The notes beneath the pieces were generated by a model. The model was not told where the DNA came from, did not search any database, and saw only the letters and a program-made list of their open reading frames with translations. Source: Ylistrum balloti (taxonomy: Eukaryota). Taken from it: a DNA stretch of 64,000 nt. Positions within the stretch are counted from its first letter, which is position 1, and each line of letters opens with the position of its first letter. The translations under genes and the position numbers were made by a program. This document shows positions 23,559-61,901 of this stretch, in pieces. Location of the stretch: NCBI RefSeq assembly GCF_031769215.1, contig NW_026781904.1:248001-312000 (forward strand), written 5' to 3'.

Positions 23559-24018
23559 ATTGTAAGTTACGTTTCCTGACACTAGTTAAACTCTCTAATT
23601 GCCCTTGTAACCGTTAATTCACGGTACAGATGAATCCAGATTATGACTACACAAGGCGTACATTATATAATTTCTAGTGAATACGGACGTCCTATAGAGA
23701 CATTAGTTTACCCCAGGGGGTGAGAGGGGGGAATCCCCACCAGGTGAAAAGACATTGCTCAAACTTCTCCAATATTGAGATCCGCTATGTCTCCAACAAC
23801 GGATTTTTCATTTTCCTTTTATCCTTGCTTACCTTCCTAGGAATGTAACTTATTATAATTGCTAGCATTGTTCATGTGGATTTAGTGACTTGCTGATTTT
23901 ATTTAATTGACGTCATACGATTCTATATATCCGGATAAGTGTAAAAAAAATTTCTAAAAATTATAATTTTCTTATTCGCAGATGACGTTTGGCGTTGGAG
24001 GCTCCATCAGACTACAAA

Positions 24019-24747
24019 ATGGATCCTTTAACTTTGGGAACAACAACGTTGTACTGGATGACTCTGATCTGCTCCAACATGATTGTCCAATCAGCTGCTT
24101 CGTCTGATCTGAATTTAGCAGCCGCCATCCCTTATGAAATCGTCACACCCTCGCCTAGTGACCCACTCAATGTCGTACCATATATGGTAACGACTTCGTC
24201 TCCAAATGAAAACGAGATTCTCGAAGTCACGTGGGAGAACAGTACCACATCATCCATCGCAATAAGTTGGCAATTTTCCAAAAGCTATAGGTCGAACGGC
24301 ACATTTCTGGGAACGCGTGTGGAATATTTCCTTAAACATGGTAAATTCAGATCGCACATATTACTTCCCTCAGTACACTCGTTTGTGTTTGAAAGCCTGA
24401 AGGTTGCCACTACATACAGATTTTGTGTTACAGCCTTCGAGAGTGTACACAATGGATTGTCAAGTGATACGCTTGAGCATGCGCGATGCTTTCGGTTACA
24501 AACTATTCCCTACATCCGGCGGGACACCGTACTTATTCTACTCCTGACGTTAAGTTATTTCCTGTTCATGGGTTGTATGGGATACTCTCAGTGGCGAAGA
24601 CGAGTTGCCCTCATTCGGAAAAGAGTGCGACGTGCTTGTGAAAACTCTTCGGAGCCCACAACACCAGTATTGCGATGGAGAGAGGTGGAAGAAAGGCAGC
24701 GACTATGTTTTCCGAGCTCCATAGAAGAGACACCACGTGATCTTTGA
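24019..24747 (+). CDS. Type I membrane protein, 242 aa: signal peptide, S/T/P-rich stalk, one fibronectin type III domain, TM helix, short basic cytoplasmic tail
   Basis: Uninterrupted ORF. ATG in aaaATGG context 37 nt after a splice acceptor (ttttcttattcgcag, ending 23981). FN3 hallmarks SIAISW, LKVATTYRFCVTA and C..L.T; TM TVLILLLTLSYFLFMGCMGYSQW followed by RRR; N-glycosylation sequons NST and NGT. Confidence 0.85.
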   Translation: MDPLTLGTTTLYWMTLICSNMIVQSAASSDLNLAAAIPYEIVTPSPSDPLNVVPYMVTTSSPNENEILEVTWENSTTSSIAISWQFSKSYRSNGTFLGTRVEYFLKHGKFRSHILLPSVHSFVFESLKVATTYRFCVTAFESVHNGLSSDTLEHARCFRLQTIPYIRRDTVLILLLTLSYFLFMGCMGYSQWRRRVALIRKRVRRACENSSEPTTPVLRWREVEERQRLCFPSSIEETPRDL

Positions 24748-30289: not shown

Positions 30290-32405
30290 TTTTATAAGAA
30301 GTTCAAAAAGAGTTCTAACATTAAGCCTAACGCTAGTCTTGAAGATTTTTACCGACATTTAAAAAAAATAGCGGTTACGTATGAGGAGAGAAGTGATGTA
30401 CCGGAAAATTATGACTCTGATACTTTATACGACGAGATAGACTTCGAAATTACGGCAGAAGAATTTGAATGTCATTAAAAAGTTAAAAAGGGAAAAAAGT
30501 CATGGCACTGATGGAATACTTAATGAATATTTGATAGAGTTTAAGTACGTTTTTGTTCCCATTTTACAAAAGATGTTTAATGCTGTTTTTAATGTCGGTT
30601 ATTTCCCAAAAGTGTTATCTAATGCTTTGATTGTTCCAATATTCAAAAAGGGGATACTTCTAATCCTGGTAACTATCGTGGAATCAGTTTGCTTAGTAAC
30701 ATGTTAAAACTTTTTACGGGAGTTTTGAACGCCAGGCTAGTGAAATGGGCGGGCGATTACAGTATAATTACTGATGCCCAGTTTGGTTTTCGCCCTGGGT
30801 TGGGCACAGTAGATGCCATATTTGCACTATATTAATTGATTAACAAATCCTTATCCAATAAGAAAAGGCTATATTGTTGTTTTGTTGACCTTAAGAAAGC
30901 CTTCGACTCGGTTGATAGGTGCAAGCTACGGTATAAGATTTCTAAGCTTGGGGTCAGAGGTAAACTTCTAGATGTGATTAAATCGTTGTACACTAATATT
31001 AAATCAAGTGTTATGGTAGACAGGAATCTGTCGAGTTTTTTTGAAAACCAAACCGGAATTTTACAAGGGGAAATGATTTCCCCGATTCTTTTAAGTATGT
31101 TTGTAAATGACTGTGAAATGGATTTCCTTAACAACGGCGTTCAGCCTTTTGAATTGCAAGAGCAAGGCGTTATTTTTACTCATGTACGCTGACGATATGG
31201 TGCTGTTCTCGGAAAGTGTTGAAGGTCTACAGCATATGCTGGACAATTTATTATCATATACTAGTAAGTGGTCTATGTCGGTTAACGTTGAAAAAACAAA
31301 AATTGTGGTTTTTAGAAAGTCAGCAGTACTACTGGAAAATGAACAATGGCAGTATAATGGGGTAACACTTGAGTCTGTGAACTCCTTTTCTTACTTGGGA
31401 GTGAAACTTAATTATAATGGAAATTTTAACTTAACACAGAAACAGTTGGCCTCACAGGGTAGAAAGGCGCTTTTTTCGCTTAAGCGAGCCTGTAAGCCTA
31501 TGTTGTTGATTTTTTGTACCTTGTTGTCACTTTTTGATACGTACGTTTGCAGTGTAGCTAACTATGCCTGTGAGGTGTGGGGCTTTCACAAAGCACCGGA
31601 TATTGAACAACTCCATCTTGATTTTTGTAAAAATATTTTAGGAGTGAGTAGAGCCACTCCAAACGCAATGATATACTTCGAACTTGGTAGATTTCCTCTT
31701 TTAATTTCTAGAAAAGTTCGAATTTTGAAATATTGATGTAAGCTATTAAGTACAAACAACTGTATTTTAAAACCATGTTATCAAGATATGTATCGGGAGT
31801 GTGAAGCAAACCCACATTGTAAAAACTGGGTTATATCTATTAAACACGAACTTGGTTCTCTCGGTATGTCTAATTATTGGCTGTCGCAAAATAGTTTAAA
31901 CACCCAACAGTTTCTTGCTTAAGCAAGGGAGAGGCTCACTGATATTTTTAAACAGGATTGTGAAGCTTTTTTCGACACTACACAGAAGTGTCTGTTTTAT
32001 AAACATATTGTTGATCATGTCTGCTTACAACCTTATTTAAGTAAATGCTTTCCGCTTAAATATAAAAAGGAAATTGTAAAATTTCGTCTGTCTTCACACA
32101 ACCTGTTAATAGAAGCTGGAAGACACCGAAAAATCCCCCGTAACTTCAGATTCTGCCCATTGTGTAAGTCCGACGTAGAGGATGAATTTCATTTTATTCT
32201 GAAATGTCACTTCTTCTCAGAGTTAAGATTTAAATATATCAAGACATACTTTATCTTCCGGAAATTCTAAAGAATTAAATAAACGAGGAAAGTTCATTTA
32301 CTATGCAAATTTACTGCGATCCACTTTGATGGCTAATAAATAGTCAATTGACATGTAATATTGTTCAATGTCTTTTTTGTAAAGATGTGGCCATGAATAA
32401 TTAAA
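30290..32405 (+). mobile_element. 5'-truncated RTE-X-type non-LTR retrotransposon ORF2 (RT plus C-terminal CCHC finger), disabled
   Basis: Stitched translation: KSHGTDGI, VPIFKKG, NYRGISLL, QFGFR, FVDLKKAFDSV, GILQGEMISP, YADD, YLGV, YACEVWG, ELGRFPL, FRLSSHNLLIEAGR, CPLCKSDVEDEFHFILKC. Several frameshifts and stops. Confidence 0.9.
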
Positions 32406-33150
32406 TTGTGCTATATTGATTATAGAAGCACAAATTACGATATGTGTACATTTATTAATTATTAGATTATGCATACATATTAATTACATTAATTACTTGT
32501 GTGTGTATTTTCACACGAAGCTGGCCTGTATTAATATTAATATAATTATATTGCTTTGCTATATATCGATGAGATGAATTGCTCAAGATGAATAAAGAAT
32601 ATGAATATAAATTGAATATCTTCACAATTTTTTTTTTCTGAACTCTATTCCCTATCCTGGTACGTATCACGTTGTGCGACGCTCATTAAAATTTTACTGT
32701 GTGTATATCCCAAAAAAATGATACAGGAGTACTTTAAAATGATATTACGGTAAAAAGATTGTTTTATATCGAGTGCGCGTGTTTTATACTGTTATGTTTC
32801 TTTGCATTCCCGATATTCACAATAAAATCCCAACGTCCATTTTGAACATTCAATTTATTCGCGGAATCCCTGTCAAATTTAGAGCTAATAACACCACGTG
32901 ACAGTTTTTGAAAACGAGGCAATACTTTTATATAAACAAACTCGTGTGATGGCGGAGAAAATTGAAGTAACATAACACGTAATCTCTTGTTTTTCGACAC
33001 CCAGATCTGTTACGGGCAAGTAGACATTGTTTGACAATTTAGTTTAGAATTACGATAACAGTGACATTAAAATCTGTTGTTTCTGTGAAATATCACTCCA
33101 GTCGTAAACCAGTCTAATATTATTTCAACCGCGACCGATTCACTTGGGAA

Positions 33151-33223
33151 GCCATTCCTGTTAAAAGACGTGTTGTGCTGGGGTGTTCTCCGGGTGACAA
33201 CATCTTTTTAACAATAGGATGGC
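33151..33223. other. 73-nt imperfect hairpin
   Basis: gccattcct/aggatggc, gttaaaaga..tgttgt/acaaca.tctttttaac and ctgggg/ctccgg (with G:U) around a tgtt loop. Confidence 0.55.
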
Positions 33224-34619
33224 GTTGTTTTGGGAAAAAAGGCCAGGCAATTATATATTTTCATATAAGCTGCCCTTTTCTTACCTGGATTTTTATATGC
33301 GATTTACATGTGTTTCTCTTAACCTATCTCCATATGGTTGACATATTGAACTAAATATATTAATTTTATTTGATGAAAATACTGAATAATTAAGTTTGCC
33401 TTCATTTTGCTCTTAACATATATTGATAGATTAGATCATCGTGTTGGATGATTTAGCACTACACCCTAACATATTTCTAAAATTTCTTTATCATACCTGT
33501 AATAGAACTAATGCTGAACTAAGTGATATAACATATATGTAATAGTTTTTAGAAATGAAGAAAAAAACTTAAAAAACAACAAAAAAACAGTCATTCTGCC
33601 GCGGTGTCCCTTTTAATATTGTAAATAAGGTATGTCCACTTACTTTTCGCAACAACATTACTTTGCTGCATATTTACAATGGCCGCCACTGTACGGATTC
33701 TCTCTAGACTTTTTATTAAAAACCTACCGTTTACACCAATGTCACGAGAGTTTTCTTTTCGGTATGTGTAAAAGGACAATTACAGAGAGATTCCGTATAG
33801 TGACGTTCGCTGTAAATGTCGAGAGAAAATGCCAAGCGTCTAAATAAAATTGCCCATGGTTCCTAGTATTTCTGGTGAACAAAACACATGATAAAAATTA
33901 GCACCGGGAATTGGGATTATTTGCAAAAAAGTTTGAAAAAATTAAGGTCAGTACCGGAAATAGAGAGTTTTTAAAATTTTTTTACCTAATTTTGTTGACT
34001 TGCTATACAGTATATATATTGGACACCTGTTTGAATACTGTATTGTATCAGGCCTCTACAATCTTTATTTAATTATCTTATAACTACATCGTCATCCCTT
34101 CAGGAGGTCCTTATTATTGAGTCACCTCCCATATTTTTCTGATACTGTCTAGTTATGACAAATAAGTACGTTCAATGAACGATGGTTTGGTATAGGTATA
34201 CCAGGCGGGATAACTCCGATAGAATAACATACAATACGACTGTAAATGTAAGAGAGGATATAAAAAATGATCACGACCTATACATGTATTAGACCTATTA
34301 GAAATATGTATGACCTTTTCCAAAATTTTTAGTAAAATATTTTGTAAAACCAAGAAATACACATCGGACGCAAAATGGAGGGCAGCTACGAATATGAAGG
34401 CATTGATATCACACACATTTGTTTGTAGCCTACATATATGTACAGGTGTACCTAGAATTGACCAAATAACATTTTTTTCTGTTTTTGTCTTTTCTTAGTT
34501 AGTTTGTTTGTTTTTTGGAAACCTCTTCATATGGCCTATAAAACACATAAACAACACAATTTTAGAATATTATAAATGTAAAACACACACCAATAATGCT
34601 GCCGACAAACTGAACAGGT

Positions 34620-34868
34620 ACAAATTTGGCCTTCTAAGGTGTAGTCAGTCTCCTACGTTCCCGAATTATCACTAGTTCCAAAAGAACTTACTCCAAAATT
34701 AGGCAAAAGAGAGTTATGATTCTTGTACACTGCACCTCTCCGCTTAAAGAGCTATTTACCTATGGAGTTTCACCTCTTATAGTTTTTGTGGTATGCTCTG
34801 GTCAGAACTAGTACAGACAAACGGACGCACAAATCGGCGGCTAGATGCTCTACCTTCGGGGAGCAGGA
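34620..34868. mobile_element. HINE / pearl-like element fragment with terminal hairpin
   Basis: gagagttatgattcttgtacactgcac internal motif, cagacaaacggacgcac microsatellite remnant, terminal atgctctaccttcggggagca hairpin. Confidence 0.55.
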
Positions 34869-35055
34869 AAAGAAGTGGGTCAATGGTTGAGCCATAAGCG
34901 ACCACTTTAATTACTTCCAATCAGTCACCGCATTTATACCGAAGACCACCCTTCTGCTTCCTGCTGGTCAAGTATCTGGACAGCAGCTTCACAAACCATT
35001 GTCTTCAGTCTTCTTGATCAGCAGGCTGTCAAATGCATTAGACTAGCCTATCAGT
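34866..35055 (-). pseudogene. Decayed CR1/L2-type reverse transcriptase, downstream part
   Basis: Minus strand: YVATTLIG*SNAFDSLLIKK...YLTSRKQK...D*LEVIKVVAYGSTIDPLLF, matching the YVAxILMDLSKAFD, YLTNRKQ and GVPQGSILGPLLF motifs. Confidence 0.8.
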
Positions 35056-37174
35056 GTGGTGGCGACATACCTATGGCGACGACATACTCATGGCGGCGAC
35101 ATACCCATGGTAACAACATATCCATGGTTGCGTCATACCCATGGTGGCAACATACCAATGGCGACGACATACCCGTGGTGGCGCCATACCCATGGTGGCA
35201 ACATATTCATGGTGGCGACATACCCATGGCAGCGACATACCCGTGGTTGCGTCATACCCATTGTGGCGACATTCCCATGGCAGCGACTTACTCCTGGCGG
35301 CGACATAATCATGGTGGCGACATACTCATAGGCGACATACCCATGGTGGCGACAAACTCATGGTTGCACCATACCCATGGTGGCAATTATACCCTTGGCG
35401 GCGACATACACGTGGTGGCGACATACCAATGGTTGCGACATAATCATGGTGGCGACATACCCATGGTGGCGACATACTTATGGTTGCGCCATACCCATGG
35501 TGGCAATTATACCCATGGCGGCGACATACCCGTGGTGGCGACATACCCATGGTGGTGCATACACATACTCATGGCGGCGACATACCCATGGTGGCGTCAT
35601 ACACATGGCGGCGACATACCCATGGTGGCGACATACATGAGAGCAACATGGCGGCGACATACCCATTGCGGCAACATACTCATGGCTGCGACATACCCAT
35701 GGTGGTGACATACACATGGCAGCGACATACTCATGGCTGCGACATACCCATGGTGGTGACATACACATGGCAGCGACATACTCATGGCGGCGACATACCC
35801 ATGGTGGCGTCATACTCATGGCGGCGACATACCCTTGTTGGCGTCATACCCAGGGCGGCGACATACTCATGGTGGCGACATAAGCATGAGAGCAACTTAC
35901 TCCTGGCGGCGACATAATCATGGTGGCGACATACTCATAGGCGACATACCCATGGTGGCGACAAACTCATGGTTGCGTCATACCCATGGTGGCAATTATA
36001 CACTTGGCGGCGACATACACGTGGTTGCGACATACCAATGGTTGCGTCATACCCATGGTGGCAATTATACCCATGGCGGCGACATACCTATGGCAGCGAC
36101 ATACTCATGGCGGCGACATACCCATGGTGGCGTCATACCAATGGCGGCAACATACCCATGGTGGCGACATACCCATGGTGGCGTTATACCAATAGCCGCG
36201 ACATACCCATGGTGGCGTCATACCCATGGTGGCGACATACACATGGTGGCGTCATACCCATGGCGGCGACATACCCATGGTGGCGACATACACATGACAG
36301 CGACATACCTATGGTGGCGACATACCCATTGTGGCGACATACACATGGCGGCGTCATACCCATGGTGGCAACGTACTCATGGTTGCGTCATACCCATGGT
36401 GGCAATTATACCCTTGGCGGCGACATACACGTGGTGGCGACATACCAATGGTTGCGACATAATCATGGTGGCGACATACCCATGGTGGCGACATACTCAT
36501 GGTTGCGTCATACCCATGGTGGCAATTATACCCATGGCAGCGACATACCCGTGGTGGCGACATACCCATTGCGGCAACATACTCATGGCTGCGACATACC
36601 CATGGTGGTGACATACACATGGCAGCGACATACTCATGGCGGCGACATACCCATGGTGGCGTCATACTCATGGCGGCGACATACCCTTGTTGGCGTCATA
36701 CCCAGGGCGGCGACATACTCATGGTGACGACATAAGCATGAGAGCAACTTACTCCTGGCGGCGACATAATCATGGTGGCGACATACTCATAGGCGACATA
36801 CCCATGGTGGCGACAAACTCATGGTTGCGTCATACCCATGTTGGCAATTATACCCTTGGCGGCGACATACCCATGGTGGCGACAAACTCATGGTTGCGTC
36901 ATACCCATGGTGGCAATTATACACTTGGCGGCGACATACACGTGGTGGCGACATACCAATGGTTGCGTCATACCCATGGTGGCAATTATACCCATGGCGG
37001 CGACATACCCATGGCAGCGACATACTCATGGCGGCGTCATACCCATTGTGGCAACGTACTCATGGTGCCGACATACCCATGGTGGCGACATACCCATGGT
37101 GGCGTCATACCCATGTTGGCGACACACCCATTGTGGCGACATACACATGGCAGCGACATACTCATTGTGGCGCC
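35056..37174. repeat. 17-bp GC-rich minisatellite, about 124 units, with higher-order duplications
   Basis: Unit ggtggcgacatacccat (10/17 GC). The 17-bp period explains the rotating 17-aa peptide ORFs in all frames. Confidence 0.97.
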
Positions 37175-37510
37175 AATCCTTAACAAATCTCACCAGTGAA
37201 TGAACTCAAAATCCTAGTCAGAAAACTACCAGAAAAGATTATAAAATATTAAAAATTGATCCAGCAGCTCTCAGATATTTTAGAGAATCATGTTAGTATA
37301 CTCACTGGCCTTTTAATGTTAAACATCATTTTTCTTTAAAAACTGGAACAGCCTCTGAGCCTGGTGGGAAAGGAACTTTGTGTAACAATTCAAAGACCTT
37401 ATAAAATGAAATTTACATGATCACAGCATGCTGTAATATCTTAGGAAAAATCCCGTCAACATCTGTAGATTTCCCTGTATATCTTGTACAAACTGATTAT
37501 TATCTTACTC
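37175..37510 (-). pseudogene. Decayed CR1/L2-type reverse transcriptase, upstream part
   Basis: Minus strand: GKSTDVDGIFPKILQ...FP...AVPVFK...RPVSILT*FSKISE...LVRFVKDWRHNEYVAA, running straight into the array. Confidence 0.75.
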
Positions 37511-38761
37511 GGCAAATCTACAGAGATTGTCTGAAATGATAAACTATGAAAAACTAAAACACCATGAACTGGTACGGAACACAATAAATACAATATTCAA
37601 GGAAGGAAGAGTTAATTAAACATAAGGCTTAATTATAATTGTCGCCAAATATTTTGTCACGTCTGTTCACCACAATGAAATACACAAGTTATAAATATTG
37701 CAGAACGCTCGCTTTAAATGGCTTTGACGTAATTCATGTTATACGTGATATTTTTGTCACTTTTCTCTTTCTTCACAAGTGTTATGTTTAGGTTTTGCTT
37801 TGCAAGCTGCCCCGCTAAAATCCTTATGAATAATTACCATGGCACGTGAAGGCACAATTAAGATAAAAATGGCATGTGATGTGTCACAGGGATTTAATGA
37901 TATACAGTTATATATAGATACTTATCATCGCTTTGCTTTTATAATTAATAAACAGGAAATGATTAAAACAAAAAGTCCATTACGTCTTGCGGGGACTTTC
38001 TGATATTATGACAGTAAAATACGCGTAGTGATACGGAGTGGTAGAAATGTAGAAGAGTTGTCTCCCGTCTTACGTTGTTACAAGGATCTCTTTCAAGAAC
38101 AATGGATTTTTGCCCACGAAACAACTCAAATTAAAGTGGGTGATGTTTGTAACACTTTGAATGACTACCCATAATATTTAAAGATTTTTGGTGCACTCAC
38201 ACTGAAGTACATGCTTCAACTCTTAGAAAAATTGTCTTCACTGAGAAAATGTGAATAAATCGTACTTTTTTTTTTTTTTTTTTACAATATTTTTAAACAT
38301 AATTACCACTATATTGTCAAAGTGACTCTTGTTAATCAAACATTATGTATAATTTGGTAATGTATGCGATGGTTTTAGTCCTTTTTAATACGTTTTATTA
38401 TACTAAATGGGTCGCAGCACAGGCCCTATGGATCTTTTAAATGTTTTAATCATGGGTAGTCATTCAAGGTGTCACAAATACCACTCATTTTTATTTGAAT
38501 TGGTGCGTGGACATAATCACATTGTTCCTGAAAGAGATCCTTTCACCAGACATGTCTACATGGTCAACAATTTATTTTATCATACTACAAATGTACACAT
38601 TTTCTGCACTTTTCAAAGTTATTAGATACAAAATTGGGGACATTTAAATGTCTGTATGGCGTACATATAATTCTTTTACATAATCCGAAATGTACATATG
38701 TTATAATACTGCGAACAACTTTCACGAATGATACATTCATATACATATGATTTTACATATA

Positions 38762-38938
38762 CAACTGAACCTAATTATCTCGAACTAGTATAACGCGAAG
38801 ACCACGTTTAATTCGAAGCATTTCGTGGGTTCCTGCCTAACTTTCCACAAAATATTCAAACTCACTGAAGTCGAATACTCCGTTGTCTCGAAGTTTTTCT
38901 ACACTCCCGCCCGAGTTCGAAATAACGATGAAATGGAT
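38762..38938 (+). mobile_element. Tc1/mariner-type MITE, decayed copy
   Basis: ta-caactgaacctaattatctcgaa ... ttaattcgaagcatttcg ... aactcactgaagtcgaatact ... ttcgaaataacga; colinear with 59747-59922. Confidence 0.6.
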
Positions 38939-41848
38939 GACCTAGAAAAACTACGTAAATGGCGAATATTTTATGACGAAAATACGTATAAAACTTCACT
39001 TCGATGAATTTGACACAATTAGAGATGTAAGTGATTTATTTACATGTCAGCGTACTTGAAGATTTTTATCGGATTGGATTTTTTATCTGAGTAAGTCGGT
39101 GTGTACACTCCATGTTTGAGATTGCAGAGGGAAATCTACCTATACAAAATGAAAAAAAATATATACTTGTGCTTTGGTTACAAAGATAATATCTGTGTTC
39201 GTTTGTTAAAACCTTAAAAAATAAATAGTTAATGAGTGTGTATGGACATTGATTAATTCTAAAATGTCGAGATATTTACTGTACATATATGTCGACCTTT
39301 GAACCCTTACCACAAACCAAACCAACCAGTTAGTTCTTATATACAGTACGTTTGGTTTGGCGAAAGTAATGAAGTCTTTAATCAATTTTTGAAAAAAAAA
39401 TCACAGAAAGGGATTGACATTACAGCCCTGTTGTGAAAAAGACGTAAATAACCATCGATCTATTATAGCGGAAGAGGGACTCCATATTTAACCGTCACCA
39501 TAGGACAAATGCCATTTAACAAACAGCACAAGAAACTGTCATTGTCACTTGTGACAAAGGACAATGGCAGCCAAGGTCAAATTCAGAACAACAAAGAGTA
39601 TAACTTAGAGAGAGCTTCCCGCATCAAGGCTAAGATTGGAGTGGGTTTAAATCTATCCATCATATTTCAATGAAATGCCAGCGGCGAATCAATTTTTTTT
39701 CCTGTAGGAGGATCAGATTTTATGGCAGAAATATGGCGCTCCACAAGAGAACCATCTGCGGGGTGTCTATTCACACAAATTAGAACTAATATTAAATTTA
39801 TTGAAGGGATGAAGAAAGTCAGTCAAAATCCGCCAAAATATCGAACGCCACTGAGCATCATCTTTAACAAGATACTTTGAAAATAGATATGTGAAATAAA
39901 CTTCGTCTTTTAAATACAAAGTTATCAATTATCTATTTTTCATGTCACCTTGTGAAAATGCATTAAAGTTTGGTTTGTGATAAAAATTGCTCATTTATCC
40001 TGTGCCTGTGATGACGTAATGTAGTATTACGTAAGACGTGGCGTTATCAGTGGTACATAAAACAGTTTACACCTCCTGCTTTCACACGTGCTTGTAGAAA
40101 GTGTGAAACAAGTTACCTAAATGGCGGAAAACGTGATATGCGATTGATAAGTAACACTGCCTTCGGAACATCTTGGGTAATATTCATATAACTCAGATCC
40201 CATCGCAAAAATCTGTCAAAGTACTTGTAATTGTAACTAACATGATCAAGGAATTTCAAATCTGTTGACAGCTGTTGCTGTGAAAAAAATGTGCTCGGCA
40301 ATACAATATTGACAGTTTTTCCTGTGGCAACACAAGCTCAGTGACACGATGTGTGTGTACTGCAAATACAACCTGTCTATAACGACCATATGTCGTTACA
40401 GAAGAATCCGTCCTCATAAGATACCAGTCTTGTACAATTTTGTAATACTGGTCAGAAACCAATCTGTAATACCACCTGCATATACGGAAAGCAACAGATA
40501 AGTAAAATTTTGTTTACAAAACGATAAATCATCCATGAAAACTTTATTTAACACCCTTTCGCTGGTCCCTGACAGTAGATTCATGTTATATGTATTTCGC
40601 TTAAGCCATTAGCGTATAAAGAAGTTTTCTTGGTTCAAATCGAGTTCTGTTTTCAACTTCAGACGATGTACATTCTCCATGTGTATTGAAAGGTGCTGTT
40701 TAGTTTTGTGTCTTTTGTACAGTCCTCTGATACATGAGGACATTTCCAACCCCACTCTCCATTTTACAAGTACGAACTCTAGAGTTATTTCATGAAGTAC
40801 TATCATGTGTAGTACTCTGCAAGCCTTCCTTTTACAAACAATCAAGTTATCAAAGGTTTCATTAGTACAGAATTGTGAAACATAATCACTATAAATATTC
40901 ATATTGTTCCTCTAAAAGTTAACGTTTAAAAAGTCTAAATATAATTTGTGACAGTGTCTTTCCCTCTTTCATGGCGTCGTTATCGGTTTTTAAAAAGAAA
41001 CTGTCGAAAATGTGCGGTTGCGTCCTACATTTTACGCCGAGCCTCCCACACAATCCCGGTTCGAAGTACAGATAGGGCCTTGAAGATAACGGTCTCCAAT
41101 TACAACTCCGTCGCTTAGATAAATTTACCCTAAAAGGACACCACCACATGAAGTACTTAACACACGTTCCAGTCCTCCGGGACTTCAAACACGATTGTAA
41201 TCGGCTTATCGATTACTTTTCTCTTTCACACTTTGTACGGCAGCACAAAGAGACGAAAAATCAAAACAATTTTTCTAAATCTTTCTACTTCCGGTGTAAT
41301 ACTTCTGAGGACAGCGTCAATGGAAACGGGATATAACTGTTGTGAATTTCAATCTTTTGATGGTTGAAGATCGATAATGGAGAGCACACTTTGTCACAAA
41401 ATAGCAATATATATATCAGTTGGATTATAAGCAAAATTAATTATTTTCATAACTTGCTTAAGGCAATGGTGAGTAGGGGAATAAACATGACTTGCAATTT
41501 TGAAAACGAACATATTTCTTTAAAAGATTATACTCGTTCCACATGACATTTTGAAAAAGCCACGAAATTTCTTCAATTTATCAACATCTATTTCATTAGC
41601 CGAAGGTTTGTAGCTTGGACTGAAGTGCAAAAGTTTGATTTATGCATATGCCAATATAACCGAAATGTAAAAAAAATGTGCCAGAATTATTCATCATTTG
41701 ACTTTTTAATAAACGTAATGGAGAAGCGTAAAAAACGAGGACAGTTTTGTAAGTTAAGTGGAGATAAATGAAAGGACAGCTACAGTAAACGCACTTTCAA
41801 CTTGCATACGGGAATGTCGTAATATTTATTCTAATGCTGTATGAAACA

Positions 41849-47472: not shown

Positions 47473-48850
47473 CTGAGAGGAAAAAGACGCAATTAGGAAT
47501 TTCCAGGTCAACTACGGGAAATAGAAAAGGGTTTTATAATGTAATTATGGTGAAACTTGAAGATAGTTGACCACTCTGTCATATACGAGAATTTCATTCG
47601 TGTACGTGAAGTAAACCTTTTAAATTTGACGTTGATTCAAGAGCACCCCACTCAAAATGAAGTGTGTTCTGGACCCAACAATAACTGCACGAACTCTTTT
47701 GTGCATTGAATTGATCGGGGTATTAACCCTCCTCATTGGTATACGATTCCATTCCTCATCCAGCGCCAACGCCAACTGAGCGACGTTGATTTGAGGATTC
47801 GGCCTACGTCTTATCCTTCTGTCCAACTCGTCCCATAAATGTTCTATTGGGGAGAGGTCAGGAATGTATGGGGGCCAGTCTAGGGTGGGGACATTGTTTG
47901 CTGCGAGATAACCATGGCAAACCCACGCTACATGCGGCCGGGCGTTGTCCTGCTGAAACGTCAGTTGACGCTGCTGTACTAGAGGAACAACTTGCGGCGC
48001 TAGGACTTGATCTCTATAGCGGAAGGCCATGAGAATTCCCTGAATAACGATCAGAGGAGTCTTGATACCGTATGCAATCCCTCCCCATACCATGACCGAT
48101 CCTCCTCCAAAGCGGTCATTCTCTAGCATGTAAGCGTCTGCATAGCGCTCGTAGGTACCTCTATATACACGACGACGTGGACTCATCTGAGAACAGGACC
48201 CTTCTCCAACGTTGCATTGGGAAGCGTCTTACGGAATATGCGTTTAGCCATTACATTCGTCTGGCACGTCGCCGCGCATTAAGCTGTGGTCCGCCGCGGT
48301 CTTAGACCGAAGGCACCCAGTCGAGTACGCACTGTCTTTGGATCAATTGGAACTTGATAACGCCCAATTGTGTTCCTTGCTGTTTCCGTGGCCGTCAGAA
48401 AGCGATTGCGTAGGTGCGAAAGTCGCATTTCCCTATCCTGCCGACGCGTCGTTACACGAGGGCGACTGCTTCGGGGACGGTCTACAACCTCTCCGGTGAC
48501 ATGTAGTCTTTGGATGAGACGGAAAATGTTCGATGGATGGACTCCAAATTGATTAGTGACCTGATTTTGCAGGGTACATTGCATAAGAAGTGCAATGGCA
48601 CGACCCCTGTCAACTTCGGACAGTCGTAGATTTTGAACCAATCCTTTATACTGGGTTCGAGATATCGTGTTTTTGTCTCTTATTCTTTTGCACAAGCGGC
48701 GTGCGCAGTTTAGTTATGCATCAGTGATTTTAATACGGTACCATAGGGACCTAACTCAAATGCACACATTTGTCAAGTTTCAAGGGTGCACGTCAAAGAT
48801 TTGATTTACAATATTAGCTTTCTGCTAATTGCGTTTCTTTTTCCTCTCTG
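47473..48850 (-). mobile_element. Full-length (1378 bp) Tc1 DD34E transposon, transposase disabled
   Basis: TIRs ctgagaggaaaaagacgcaattag (47473-47496) and ctaattgcgtttctttttcctctctg (48825-48850), each flanked by TA. HTH region RLSEVDRGRAI...GRP-like SRPRVTT; FSDES, VMVWGGI, QQDNARPH, then 34 residues to PDLSPIEHLW. Deletion, stop and frameshift between 48186 and 48290. Confidence 0.95.
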
Positions 48851-60977: not shown

Positions 60978-61901
60978 TATCTAGCTGAGTTGGTTGAATT
61001 TGGTCGATCTCTAGCTGAGTTGTATGAATTTGGTCGATCTCTTTCTGAGTTGGTTGAATTTGGTCGATCTCTTACTGAGTTGGGTGAATGTGGTCGATAT
61101 CTGCCTGAGTTGGTTGAATTTGGTCGATCTCTGGCTGAGTTGGTTGAATTTGGTCGATCTCCTGCTGAGTTGGTTTGGTCGATCTCTTTCTGAGTTGGTT
61201 GAATTTGGTCGAGCTCTTACTGAGTTGGGTGAATGTAGTCGATATCTGGCTGAGTTGGTTGAATTTGGTTGATCTCCGGCTGAGTTGGTTGAATTTGGTC
61301 GATCTCTGGCTGAGTTGGTTGAATTTGGTCGATCTCTGGCTGAGTTGGTTGAATTTGGTCGATCACTTTCTGAGTTGGTTGAATTTGGTCGATCTCTTAC
61401 TGAGTTGGGTGAATTTGGTCGATATCTGGCTGAGTTGGTTGAATTTGGTCGATCTTTTTCTGAGTTGGTTGAATTTGGTCGATCTCTTACTGAGTTGGGT
61501 GAATGTGGTCGATATCTGGCTGAGTTGGTTGAATTTGGTCGATCTCTGGCTGAGGTGGTTGAATTTGGTCGATTTCCTGCTGAGTTGGTTGAATTTGGTC
61601 GATCTCTTACTGAGTTGGGTGAATGTGGTCGATATCTGGTTAAGTTGGTTGAATTCGGTCGATCTCTGGCTGAGTTGGTTGAATTTGGTCGATCTCTAGC
61701 TGAGTTGTATGAATTTGGTCGATCTCTTTCTGAGTTGGTTGAATTTGGTCGATCTCTTACTGAGTTGGGTGAATGTGGTCGATATCTGGCTGAGTTGGTT
61801 GAATTTGGTCGATTTCTTACTGACGGATGAATTTGGTCGATCTCTTTCTTAGTTGGTTGAATTTTGTCAATCCCTTGCTGAGTTGGTTGAATTTGGTTAA
61901 T
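60978..61901. repeat. 30-bp tandem repeat, about 31 units, occupying the C1qDC 3'UTR
   Basis: Unit ctgagttggttgaatttggtcgatctctgg, in exact register from 61201 to 61810. Begins at the base after the stop codon; a minus-strand AATAAA lies just past the array at 60951-60946. Confidence 0.97.

What the first reader, a model, noticed from the sequence alone, without database searches (positions are those of the whole stretch)
34866..37510. A 2.1-kb minisatellite born inside a reverse-transcriptase motif
Seen (minus strand): RT motifs KSTDVDGIFPKIL, VPVFK, RPVSIL.FSKI and LVRFVKDWR run into cgc cac aat gag tat gtc gct gcc at (R H N E Y V A A). About 124 units of g(a/g)gtatgtcgccaccat follow, then tat gtc gcc acc aca ctg ata ggc tag tct aat gca ttt gac (YVATTLIG*SNAFD) and on to YLTSRKQ and GSTIDPLLF. 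The unit is therefore the codons for (E/G)YVA(A/T) that precede LMDLSKAFD in CR1/L2-type RTs, with cgccacaat/cgctgccat microhomology as a plausible slippage seed. Established: transposons can seed tandem repeats. Inference: both junctions are preserved, giving a base-resolved record of satellite birth from RT coding sequence.
Basis: partly seen in the sequence, partly recalled or inferred. Interest (0 to 1): 0.85.

Follow-up and report, generated by a model that had tools for sequence, protein, structure and literature searches.

The report
Minisatellite grown inside dead LINE remnant
A 2.1-kb run of about 124 copies of a 17-base unit sits exactly inside the decayed reverse-transcriptase gene of an old jumping element in a scallop genome and most likely grew there from the element's own sequence, which is a clean but ordinary example of a known way that tandem repeats arise.

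Summary
A 17-bp array of 124.5 copies lies at 35057-37172.

The flanks are a heavily decayed LINE reverse transcriptase (RT). Pfam finds nothing. A profile built from 120 real RT proteins makes the downstream flank the best non-LINE hit in the window (E=0.0026). The two flanks form one colinear match once the array is taken out.

The array sits just before the catalytic-Asp strand of motif A. Both flanks read the unit as Y-V-A in the same frame. Collapsing the array to about 1.5 units gives an RT of near-normal length.

A related genome (coded organism A) has the array at the same junction. Neither the array nor this LINE occurs elsewhere there at 80% likeness or more.

Growth in place from RT sequence is therefore the best reading (about 0.7). 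No second copy of this LINE could be found, and the profile score hardly changes when the unit is included, so the unit's origin stays circumstantial. About half the length comes from recent block duplications of 0.85-1.0 kb.

Tandem repeats derived from LINE ORF2 are already published. The scan's first readers noted four similar cases elsewhere in this genome; none has been checked. Interest is low to moderate.

The parts
35057..37172 (-). Minisatellite: 17-bp unit, 124.5 copies, minus-strand consensus GGGTATGTCGCCACCAT
   Evidence: TRF, unit table, pattern scan with 0 expected by chance. GC is 54% against 34% in the surroundings.
37164..37475 (-). Upstream LINE RT remnant, from the K-S-x-x-x-DGI motif to ...VKDWRHN. 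It is read in two frames with several stops.
   Evidence: Translations and coordinates. RPVSIL.FSKI.E matches profile positions 39-59 at 8.4 bits. HSLVRFVKDWRHN fits best at profile position 89 at 8.5 bits, shuffle p about 0.08.
37164..37172 (-). CGCCACAAT: the last 9 nt of the upstream flank (codons R-H-N). It matches the unit's 3' half CGCCACCAT at 8 of 9 bases and is a candidate direct repeat that seeded slippage. TRF counts it as the array's terminal half unit.
   Evidence: Sequence and unit alignment.
34861..35069 (-). Downstream LINE RT remnant, starting in the last unit: YVATTLIG*SNAFD ... YLTSRKQ ... GSTIDPLLFLL (motif A to motif B region)
   Evidence: Best non-LINE tile of the whole window: profile positions 138-184, 15.7 bits, E=0.0026 among 6336 tiles. 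YVATTLIGXSNAFDS fits best at profile position 107 at 11.7 bits.
36770..36993 (-). Local 69-nt (4-unit) higher-order repeat inside the array, marked by an 18-nt variant unit (TATAATTGCC)
   Evidence: Identity is 86% at lag 69 against 61% at lag 17. There are nine 18-nt variants, spaced 69 nt (4 units) or 120 nt (7 units) within clusters.
36577..36870 (-). Recent block duplication inside the array. This 294-nt block is 99% identical to 35725-36018 (lag 852).
   Evidence: Ungapped lag scan. Other pairs: 36861-37046 with 35940-36125 at 98.4%; 36389-36569 with 35370-35550 at 98.3%.
35725..36018 (-). Second copy of the 294-nt block
34663..34860 (-). High-copy dispersed repeat that abuts and ends the LINE remnant. 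No RT signal lies beyond it.
   Evidence: Summed contig depth above 1000 in 34679-34875, with repeat-family loose ends at 34690 and 34741. The single-copy contig of organism A skips or replaces 34663-34930. No profile hits below 34861.

Best explanation
An old LINE (non-LTR retrotransposon) copy decayed on the minus strand. Only part of its reverse transcriptase survives, from motif 0 to the motif B region.

Inside it lay the stretch that coded the loop and beta-strand just before the catalytic Asp of motif A (...K-D-W-R-H-N-E-Y-V-A-T-T-L-I-D...). That stretch held two imperfect 9-nt direct repeats, CGCCACAAT and CGCCACCAC, 17 nt apart.

The inferred history is:
- Replication slippage or unequal sister-chromatid exchange between those repeats made the first 17-nt tandem duplication.
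- Further slippage and unequal exchange grew it into an array whose units diverged to about 76% match.
- A 69-nt four-unit higher-order repeat formed locally.
- Intra-array block duplications of 0.85-1.0 kb (97-99% identical) then roughly doubled the array to 2.1 kb.

The array does nothing known. It is a locus-specific minisatellite in junk DNA.

Shown: the array, its hierarchy, the RT identity and colinearity of the flanks, the shared frame, its presence at the same junction in a related genome, and its absence elsewhere.

Inferred: that the unit is the RT's own codons, and that the 9-nt repeats seeded the first slip.
For: Array.
- TRF and the unit table define the array.

The flanks are RT.
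- With a profile built from 120 PF00078 proteins, the downstream flank is the best tile in the window outside a neighbouring intact-ish LINE (15.7 bits, E=0.0026 among 6336 tiles).
- The upstream flank is the third-best locus (8.4 bits).
- With the array excised, an automatic chain test gives a colinear pair of 23.7 bits. The next best chain outside the two LINEs scores 9.5.
- Non-overlapping read-throughs with X at every break score about 26 bits. They form one domain over profile positions 27-184 when one unit is kept.

The array sits at a single RT position.
- The upstream flank ends at about profile position 98-101.
- The last unit's Y-V-A-T-T-L-I-G aligns to positions 107-114, where the family has F61/Y40 at 107 and D at 114.
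- The profile expects 13 residues between W and L, and 1.5 units supply about 9. The neighbouring LINE is also 3 residues shorter in this loop.

Frame.
- The TAT of the first unit (37160) and of the last unit (35069) are 2091 nt apart, which equals 123x17 and 697x3.
- Each flank's own frame therefore reads the unit as Y-V-A.

No room for foreign termini.
- RT-like sequence resumes within 3 nt of the last unit, and the upstream RT frame runs without a break into the first unit.

Locus-specific and old.
- In four runs of a related genome, a single-copy 786-bp contig joins the same upstream flank to the array at the same point (37168).
- Depth over the array is 0-43 and over the LINE flanks about 10-15, against about 15 for single-copy DNA.

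Published precedent.
- LINE ORF2 sequences have seeded tandem repeats before (PMC9659126).
Against: - No other copy of this LINE was found, so the 17-mer was never seen as a single copy in a parent.
- Keeping the unit in frame adds at most about 1 bit to the total profile score. An earlier gain of +3 to +4.6 bits was inflated because my first stitch read 17 nt in two frames. At the fixed offset the gain is +1.7 bits.
- The frame agreement has a 1-in-3 chance under a random insertion.
- Pfam RVT_1 does not detect the flanks. Pairwise alignment to the neighbouring LINE's RT is not significant.
- Arrays with a unit matching at 14 of 17 bases (GGAGGGGACATACACAT) exist in unrelated, non-RT flanks in other public assemblies. 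I judge these to be coincidence after a search of 5.8 billion proteins.
- The unit count and the 97-99% blocks rest on one assembly.
Confidence: 0.7

Rival explanations
1. The array grew from, or arrived as, sequence foreign to the LINE and merely landed in the RT remnant. Possible sources are a short filler insertion, a re-integrated extrachromosomal repeat circle, or ectopic conversion from another array. Its RT-like reading would then be chance.
For: The unit adds at most about 1 bit to the RT profile score. This copy has other small deletions relative to the profile, so a loss of about 11 residues at the site is not implausible. Similar 17-mers occur in unrelated flanks in other assemblies.
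Against: No other locus carries the array in the window or in organism A's contigs. No transposon termini or target duplications are seen, and RT-like sequence abuts the array within 0-3 nt on both sides. Frame, length and the aromatic residue at column 107 all fit the RT. The L001-L003 arrays are only about 70% alike, lie in 50%-GC DNA and share no flanks.
Confidence: 0.13
2. The tandem repeat, or a short version of it, was already inside the LINE when this copy inserted. It would then be a family-wide internal repeat rather than something born at this locus.
For: No other copies could be inspected, so this is not excluded. Internal tandem repeats are common in mobile elements of bivalves (PMC7492417).
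Against: A 17-nt repeat shifts the RT frame, so a carrier could not encode its own RT. At 80% likeness or more, neither the LINE flanks nor the array have extra copies in organism A. The recent block duplications show that growth continued at this locus.
Confidence: 0.07
3. The array is real, but its length and the near-identical 0.85-1.0 kb blocks are assembly artefacts, such as haplotypes or reads stacked in tandem. The true array would then be about half as long.
For: The blocks are 97-99% identical over 124-294 nt. No reads from the assembled individual were available. The runs found hold only 5-6% of the sampled words.
Against: The block pairs have different lags (852, 921, 1019, 609, 1461) and carry their own substitutions. 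That looks like biology rather than a simple duplication error. The array exists independently in organism A's contigs.
Confidence: 0.08
4. The flanks are not RT at all, and the motifs are chance look-alikes in AT-rich DNA.
For: Pfam finds 0 hits. The word-based homologue search finds 0 hits. The alignment to the neighbouring RT is not significant.
Against: The window-wide tile test gives E=0.0026 for the downstream flank. The upstream hit lies on the same strand, in the right order, next to the array. The chain scores 23.7 bits against 9.5 for the next best.
Confidence: 0.02

Closest known systems
Tandem repeats derived from LINE ORF2: Pvc20 minisatellite of the harbour seal and PROsat of Phodopus roborovskii (both L1 ORF2), and the chicken HinfI/SCR1 repeat (CR1 3'UTR plus partial ORF2), as listed in PMC9659126
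   Same: The repeat unit is taken from the coding region of a LINE's second ORF. The parent is a dead retrotransposon. Growth is by tandem duplication of DNA, not by transposition.
   Different: Here the unit is very short (17 nt, about 6 codons). The array is at a single locus and still sits in its parent with both junctions readable. The host is a scallop, and the RT is not L1. The homology between unit and parent is inferred from position and frame, not from alignment to a family consensus.
Satellite-like arrays carried by Helentron/Helitron non-autonomous elements in oysters (PMC7492417) and other TE-borne tandem repeats of bivalves
   Same: Bivalve genomes hold short tandem arrays scattered in or beside mobile elements.
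   Different: Those arrays are part of the mobile element and are spread with it to many loci. This one is not dispersed and lies in a coding remnant, not in an element's repeat module.
Minisatellites copied from exon-donor junctions ('mirages'), reported for this same scallop by an earlier follow-up of this scan (s1-258768, unchecked here)
   Same: Local sequence of any kind is turned into a tandem array in place, and the array edge stays in register with its source.
   Different: The source here is a dead transposon gene, not a live exon end. No splice signal is involved.

Membership tests
Non-LTR (LINE) reverse transcriptase, Pfam RVT_1 (PF00078) | Significant match to the curated Pfam model | tested here: not met
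   hmmscan found 0 families, even at E up to 10, for the pieces and for the X-stitched flanks. The copy is too decayed.
Non-LTR (LINE) reverse transcriptase, Pfam RVT_1 (PF00078) | Significant, colinear match to a profile of bona fide LINE RT proteins | tested here: met
   The profile was built from 120 PF00078 proteins. The downstream flank scores E=0.0026 window-wide. The colinear chain scores 23.7 bits against 9.5 for the next best. The stitched flanks score about 26 bits as one domain over positions 27-184.
Non-LTR (LINE) reverse transcriptase, Pfam RVT_1 (PF00078) | Intact catalytic residues (Asp of motif A, Y/F-x-D-D of motif C) | tested here: not met
   Motif A reads L-I-G-stop-S-N-A-F-D, with Gly where Asp should be. 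The motif C region is missing, because the remnant stops at ...DPLLFLL. This is a dead fragment, not a working gene.
The 3' part of the element is absent. Only generic LINE motifs are seen (NYRP.SL..SKI.E, SKAFD, YL..R.Q, GVPQGS.LGPLLF).
Transposon-derived minisatellite or satellite DNA | Head-to-tail array of a defined unit | tested here: met
   TRF: period 17, 124.5 copies.
Transposon-derived minisatellite or satellite DNA | Array embedded in the element, with both flanks colinear in the element | tested here: met
   The upstream flank ends at about profile position 98-101, and the downstream reading starts at 107.
Transposon-derived minisatellite or satellite DNA | Unit homologous to a stretch present once in other copies of the element | tested here: inconclusive
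   No other copy was found. The indirect support is shared frame, length fit and Y at column 107. The profile score gain is at most about 1-2 bits.
Satellite DNA family (abundant, multi-locus) | Many arrays or high copy number across the genome | tested here: not met
   Summed contig depth over the array is 0-43, against about 15 for single-copy DNA, in four runs of a related genome. There is none elsewhere in the window.

The most novel reading that the evidence does not exclude
This locus may be one instance of a genome-wide habit of this scallop. Short imperfect direct repeats in any sequence would be turned into kb-scale minisatellites unusually often, and decayed LINE RT coding sequence would be a recurrent seed. 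First readers noted four other 'born from an RT motif' arrays, besides exon-junction and ribozyme arrays. If so, the set of arrays still embedded in their parents would give a natural series for measuring what sequence features start a minisatellite and how fast it grows.
Probability: 0.2. Interest if true: 0.5.

Novelty: new member of a known kind. Interest (0 to 1): 0.25.

Why it matters
This is a tidy case of how a tandem repeat can start from a few codons of a dead transposon gene. Both edges are still readable against the parent protein. A hierarchy is visible: 17-nt unit, 69-nt higher-order repeat, then blocks of about 1 kb. A related genome shows that the array is older than the split between the two.

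It supports the published view that transposon remnants feed the pool of tandem repeats. It does not change that view. Its main use would be as one data point in a genome-wide survey of array births in bivalves.

Tried and rejected
- Pfam on the RT pieces and on the X-stitched flanks: no hit.
- Word-based homologue search with the stitched flanks: 97 candidates, none at E up to 1. Full-length ORF2 proteins were outside that tool's length range.
After that I sent it to no outside search and used it only in scripts on the closed machine.
- Local alignment of the flanks to the neighbouring LINE's RT: not better than shuffles.
- My first stitched protein read 17 nt (37202-37186) in two frames. I found this and redid the scores. 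The '+3 to +4.6 bits for the unit' should be disregarded.
Only the 120 real proteins it returned were used afterwards.
- BLAST of the flanks against the window: no second copy.
- Exact-pattern scan of metagenome contigs for a two-unit pattern: 0 hits.
- Search with the 275-aa plus-strand ORF that runs through the array: two Logan proteins. Their contigs (L001-L003) hold 17-bp arrays about 70% like this one, in unrelated 50%-GC flanks with no RT signal. I rejected them as relatives.
- The long plus-strand ORFs in the array (187-275 aa) have no Pfam family. They exist only because the unit lacks stop codons on that strand.
- Rfam and tRNA scans of 32000-40500: nothing.
- Cluster look-up for names of the profile proteins: none carry a telling name.
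- The scan's own index by sequence: blank.
Full report
**1. What is there**

On the minus strand, Tandem Repeats Finder reports one array at 35057-37172. It has period 17, 124.5 copies, 76% matches and 2% indels. The consensus is GGGTATGTCGCCACCAT.
- All 74 matches with up to 2 mismatches lie inside the array, and dinucleotide shuffles give none.
- The array is 54% G+C in a 34% G+C neighbourhood.
- A unit-by-unit alignment shows sharp edges.
- The 5' edge (minus strand) reads ...AAG GAT TGG CGC CAC AAT | GAG TAT GTC GCT GCC AT...
- The 3' edge reads ...AGGTATGTCGCCACCAC | ACTGATAGGCTAGTCTAATGCATTTGAC.
- The last 9 nt of the upstream flank (CGCCACAAT) match the 3' half of the unit (CGCCACCAT) at 8 of 9 bases. 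TRF therefore counts them as a half unit.

**2. The array has a history**

Units differ from the consensus by 0-8 positions.
- An 18-nt variant unit (TATAATTGCC) recurs nine times. Within its clusters it is spaced 69 nt (4 units) or 120 nt (7 units).
- In 36993-36770, identity is 86% at lag 69 against 61% at lag 17. This is a four-unit higher-order repeat.
- On top of that lie long, near-identical internal duplicates:
  - 294 nt at 99% (36870-36577 with 36018-35725, lag 852)
  - 186 nt at 98.4% (lag 921)
  - 181 nt at 98.3% (lag 1019)
  - 152 nt at 97.4% (lag 609)
  - 124 nt at 97.6% (lag 1461)
- So roughly half of the 'about 124 units' come from recent block duplications of an older, already diverged array.

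**3. Are the flanks a reverse transcriptase?**

The copy is badly decayed: two reading frames, at least five in-frame stops, three frameshifts, and Gly plus a stop where motif A should have its Asp.

The standard searches failed:
- Pfam finds nothing in the pieces or in an X-stitched read-through.
- The word-based homologue search finds nothing.
- Alignment to the RT of a better-kept LINE 4 kb away (30.5-32.2 kb, plus strand) is no better than shuffles.

Only the returned proteins were used. From them I built a 228-position profile.

I cut the whole window into 6336 translated tiles and searched them with the profile.
- Outside the neighbouring LINE (103 bits), the best tile of the window is the downstream flank: 34998-34861, profile positions 138-184, 15.7 bits, E=0.0026.
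- The upstream flank (37323-37264, profile positions 39-59, 8.4 bits, E=0.43) is the third-best locus.

An automatic test for colinear pairs, run with the array excised, gives 23.7 bits for this locus. The next chain outside the two LINEs scores 9.5.

Read-throughs with X at every break, and with no nucleotide read twice, score about 26 bits (E about 2e-10 for a single sequence). They align as one domain over profile positions 27-184 when one unit is kept.

The flanks are therefore two adjoining parts of one LINE RT.

The clade (CR1, L2 or other) could not be determined.

**4. Where exactly the array sits**

- The upstream 13 residues HSLVRFVKDWRHN fit best with H at profile position 89 (8.5 bits, shuffle p about 0.08).
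- The downstream YVATTLIGXSNAFDS fits best with Y at position 107 (11.7 bits, or 10.0 without the unit's residues).
- In the family, column 107 is F (61) or Y (40) and column 114 is the catalytic Asp.
- The array therefore lies in the loop and strand just before motif A.
- Between the last clearly non-repeat residue upstream (W, about position 98) and the first one downstream (L, position 112) the profile expects 13 residues. The array collapsed to 1.5 units (26 nt) would give about 9.
- The neighbouring LINE is itself 3 residues shorter than the profile in this loop.
- The TAT codon of the first unit (37160) and that of the last unit (35069) are 2091 nt apart, which is 123x17 and also 697x3. 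Each flank, read in its own RT frame, reads the unit as Tyr-Val-Ala.
- RT-like sequence resumes within 3 nt of the last unit, and the upstream RT frame runs without a break into the first unit. That leaves no room for the termini of a carrier element.

**5. A correction**

My first stitched protein read 17 nt (37202-37186) in two frames. With that error, keeping the unit seemed to add 3-4.6 bits. With clean stitches it adds at most about 1 bit to the total, and 1.7 bits at the fixed offset.

The profile therefore cannot tell whether the unit's residues are RT residues. That inference rests on position, frame, length and the aromatic residue.

**6. Elsewhere**

- The window holds no second copy of the flanks or of the unit.
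- One search for sequencing runs found four DNA runs of a coded 'organism A', each holding 5-6% of the sampled words.
- Their single-copy contigs differ from the window by about 1-8% in unique flanks. Organism A is therefore a close relative or a divergent population.

In all four runs:
- A single-copy 786-bp contig joins the upstream LINE flank (37605-37168) to about 370 nt of 17-mer array. The array is thus at the same junction in that genome and predates the split.
- Summed contig depth is 0-43 over the array and 10-15 over the LINE flanks, against about 15 for single-copy DNA. Neighbouring dispersed repeats reach 400-1200.
- At 80% likeness or more, neither the array nor this LINE has further copies there. 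This argues against an inserted, dispersed satellite. It also means no parent copy could be inspected.
- The same contigs skip or replace 34663-34930, which covers the last RT piece and the adjacent high-copy repeat.

**7. Dead ends**

- A search with the 275-aa plus-strand ORF that runs through the array found two proteins from Logan assemblies.
- Their contigs L001-L003 carry 17-bp arrays (GGAGGGGACATACACAT, 14 of 17 like this unit, about 70% array identity). The DNA is 50% G+C, with unrelated flanks and no RT signal.
- After a search of billions of proteins I take this as coincidence, but I list it as evidence against.
- A two-unit pattern found nothing in metagenome contigs.
I did not send it to any outside search afterwards and used it only in scripts on the closed machine.

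**8. Mechanism**

The most likely sequence of events is:
1. A LINE copy decays.
2. A 26-nt stretch of its RT holds two imperfect 9-nt direct repeats 17 nt apart.
3. A slip or unequal exchange between them makes the first duplication.
4. The array grows and diverges.
5. A 69-nt higher-order repeat forms.
6. Blocks of about 1 kb duplicate recently.

The structure, the colinearity, the frame and the shared junction in a relative are shown. The seeding event and the unit's descent from RT codons are inferred.

I put this reading at about 0.7. The rivals are:
- foreign seed or inserted array (0.13)
- repeat already in the LINE before insertion (0.07)
- length partly an assembly artefact (0.08; this concerns size only)
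- flanks not RT (0.02)

**9. Comparison and novelty**

- A review of transposons as sources of tandem repeats lists repeats derived from LINE ORF2. These are PROsat in Phodopus and Pvc20 in the harbour seal (both L1 ORF2), and the chicken HinfI/SCR1 repeat (CR1 3'UTR plus partial ORF2) (PMC9659126).
- Bivalves are known for tandem arrays associated with mobile elements (PMC7492417).
- This is a new member of a known kind.
- What is a little unusual is the short unit, the single locus, and the fact that both edges can still be read against the parent protein.
- The scan's first readers noted four other 'minisatellite born from an RT motif' cases in other pieces of this genome. An earlier follow-up described arrays copied from exon ends in the same scallop. 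None of these was checked here.
- Taken together they hint at a general habit of this genome, which is the only route to higher interest.

**10. Verdict**

Interest is 0.25.

Noticed in passing
window 30500-32250 (+): A second, much better preserved LINE on the opposite strand. Its RT runs from K-S-H-G-T-DGI through FVDLKKAFDSV to YADD and beyond, with a 209-aa open frame at 31107-31736 (Pfam RVT_1, E=8.6e-11). It scores 103 bits against my RT profile and carries a few stops and a frameshift.
   Followed up: partly
window 34663-34860 (core 34690-34741): A very high-copy dispersed repeat (summed contig depth above 1000 in organism A) that abuts the end of the LINE remnant. The single-copy contig of organism A skips or replaces 34663-34930. 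No tRNA or Rfam match was found.
   Followed up: partly
window 37437-37660 and 38619-39012: Two more high-copy repeats just upstream of the LINE remnant (depths of about 400-600 and about 700), with many small joints between 37531 and 37667. This suggests a variable internal repeat.
   Followed up: no
window 38082-38187 and 38439-38542: An inverted repeat with arms of about 106 nt, 80% alike and about 250 nt apart. Organism A's contigs show an 'opposite strands' joint at 38131/38451. It may be a foldback or MITE-like element.
   Followed up: no
window 35073-37199 (+): Four open frames of 187-275 aa run through the array on the plus strand. The unit has no stop codon there, and the frames have no Pfam family. 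They are a by-product of the repeat, not genes.
   Followed up: yes
window 23989-24747 (+); 47620-48186 (-); 61285-61830 (+): Open frames with a fibronectin type III domain (E=6.6e-07), a DDE_3 transposase fragment (E=3.4e-06) and a decapeptide-repeat region (E=3.5e-15).
   Followed up: no
L001 558-843, 1406-1958, 2205-2393 (Logan contig of another sample): A cluster of several different purine-rich minisatellites (periods 12, 14 and 17) side by side. The 17-mer GGAGGGGACATACACAT resembles this window's unit at 14 of 17 bases, but the flanks are unrelated.
   Followed up: partly
   Followed up: no
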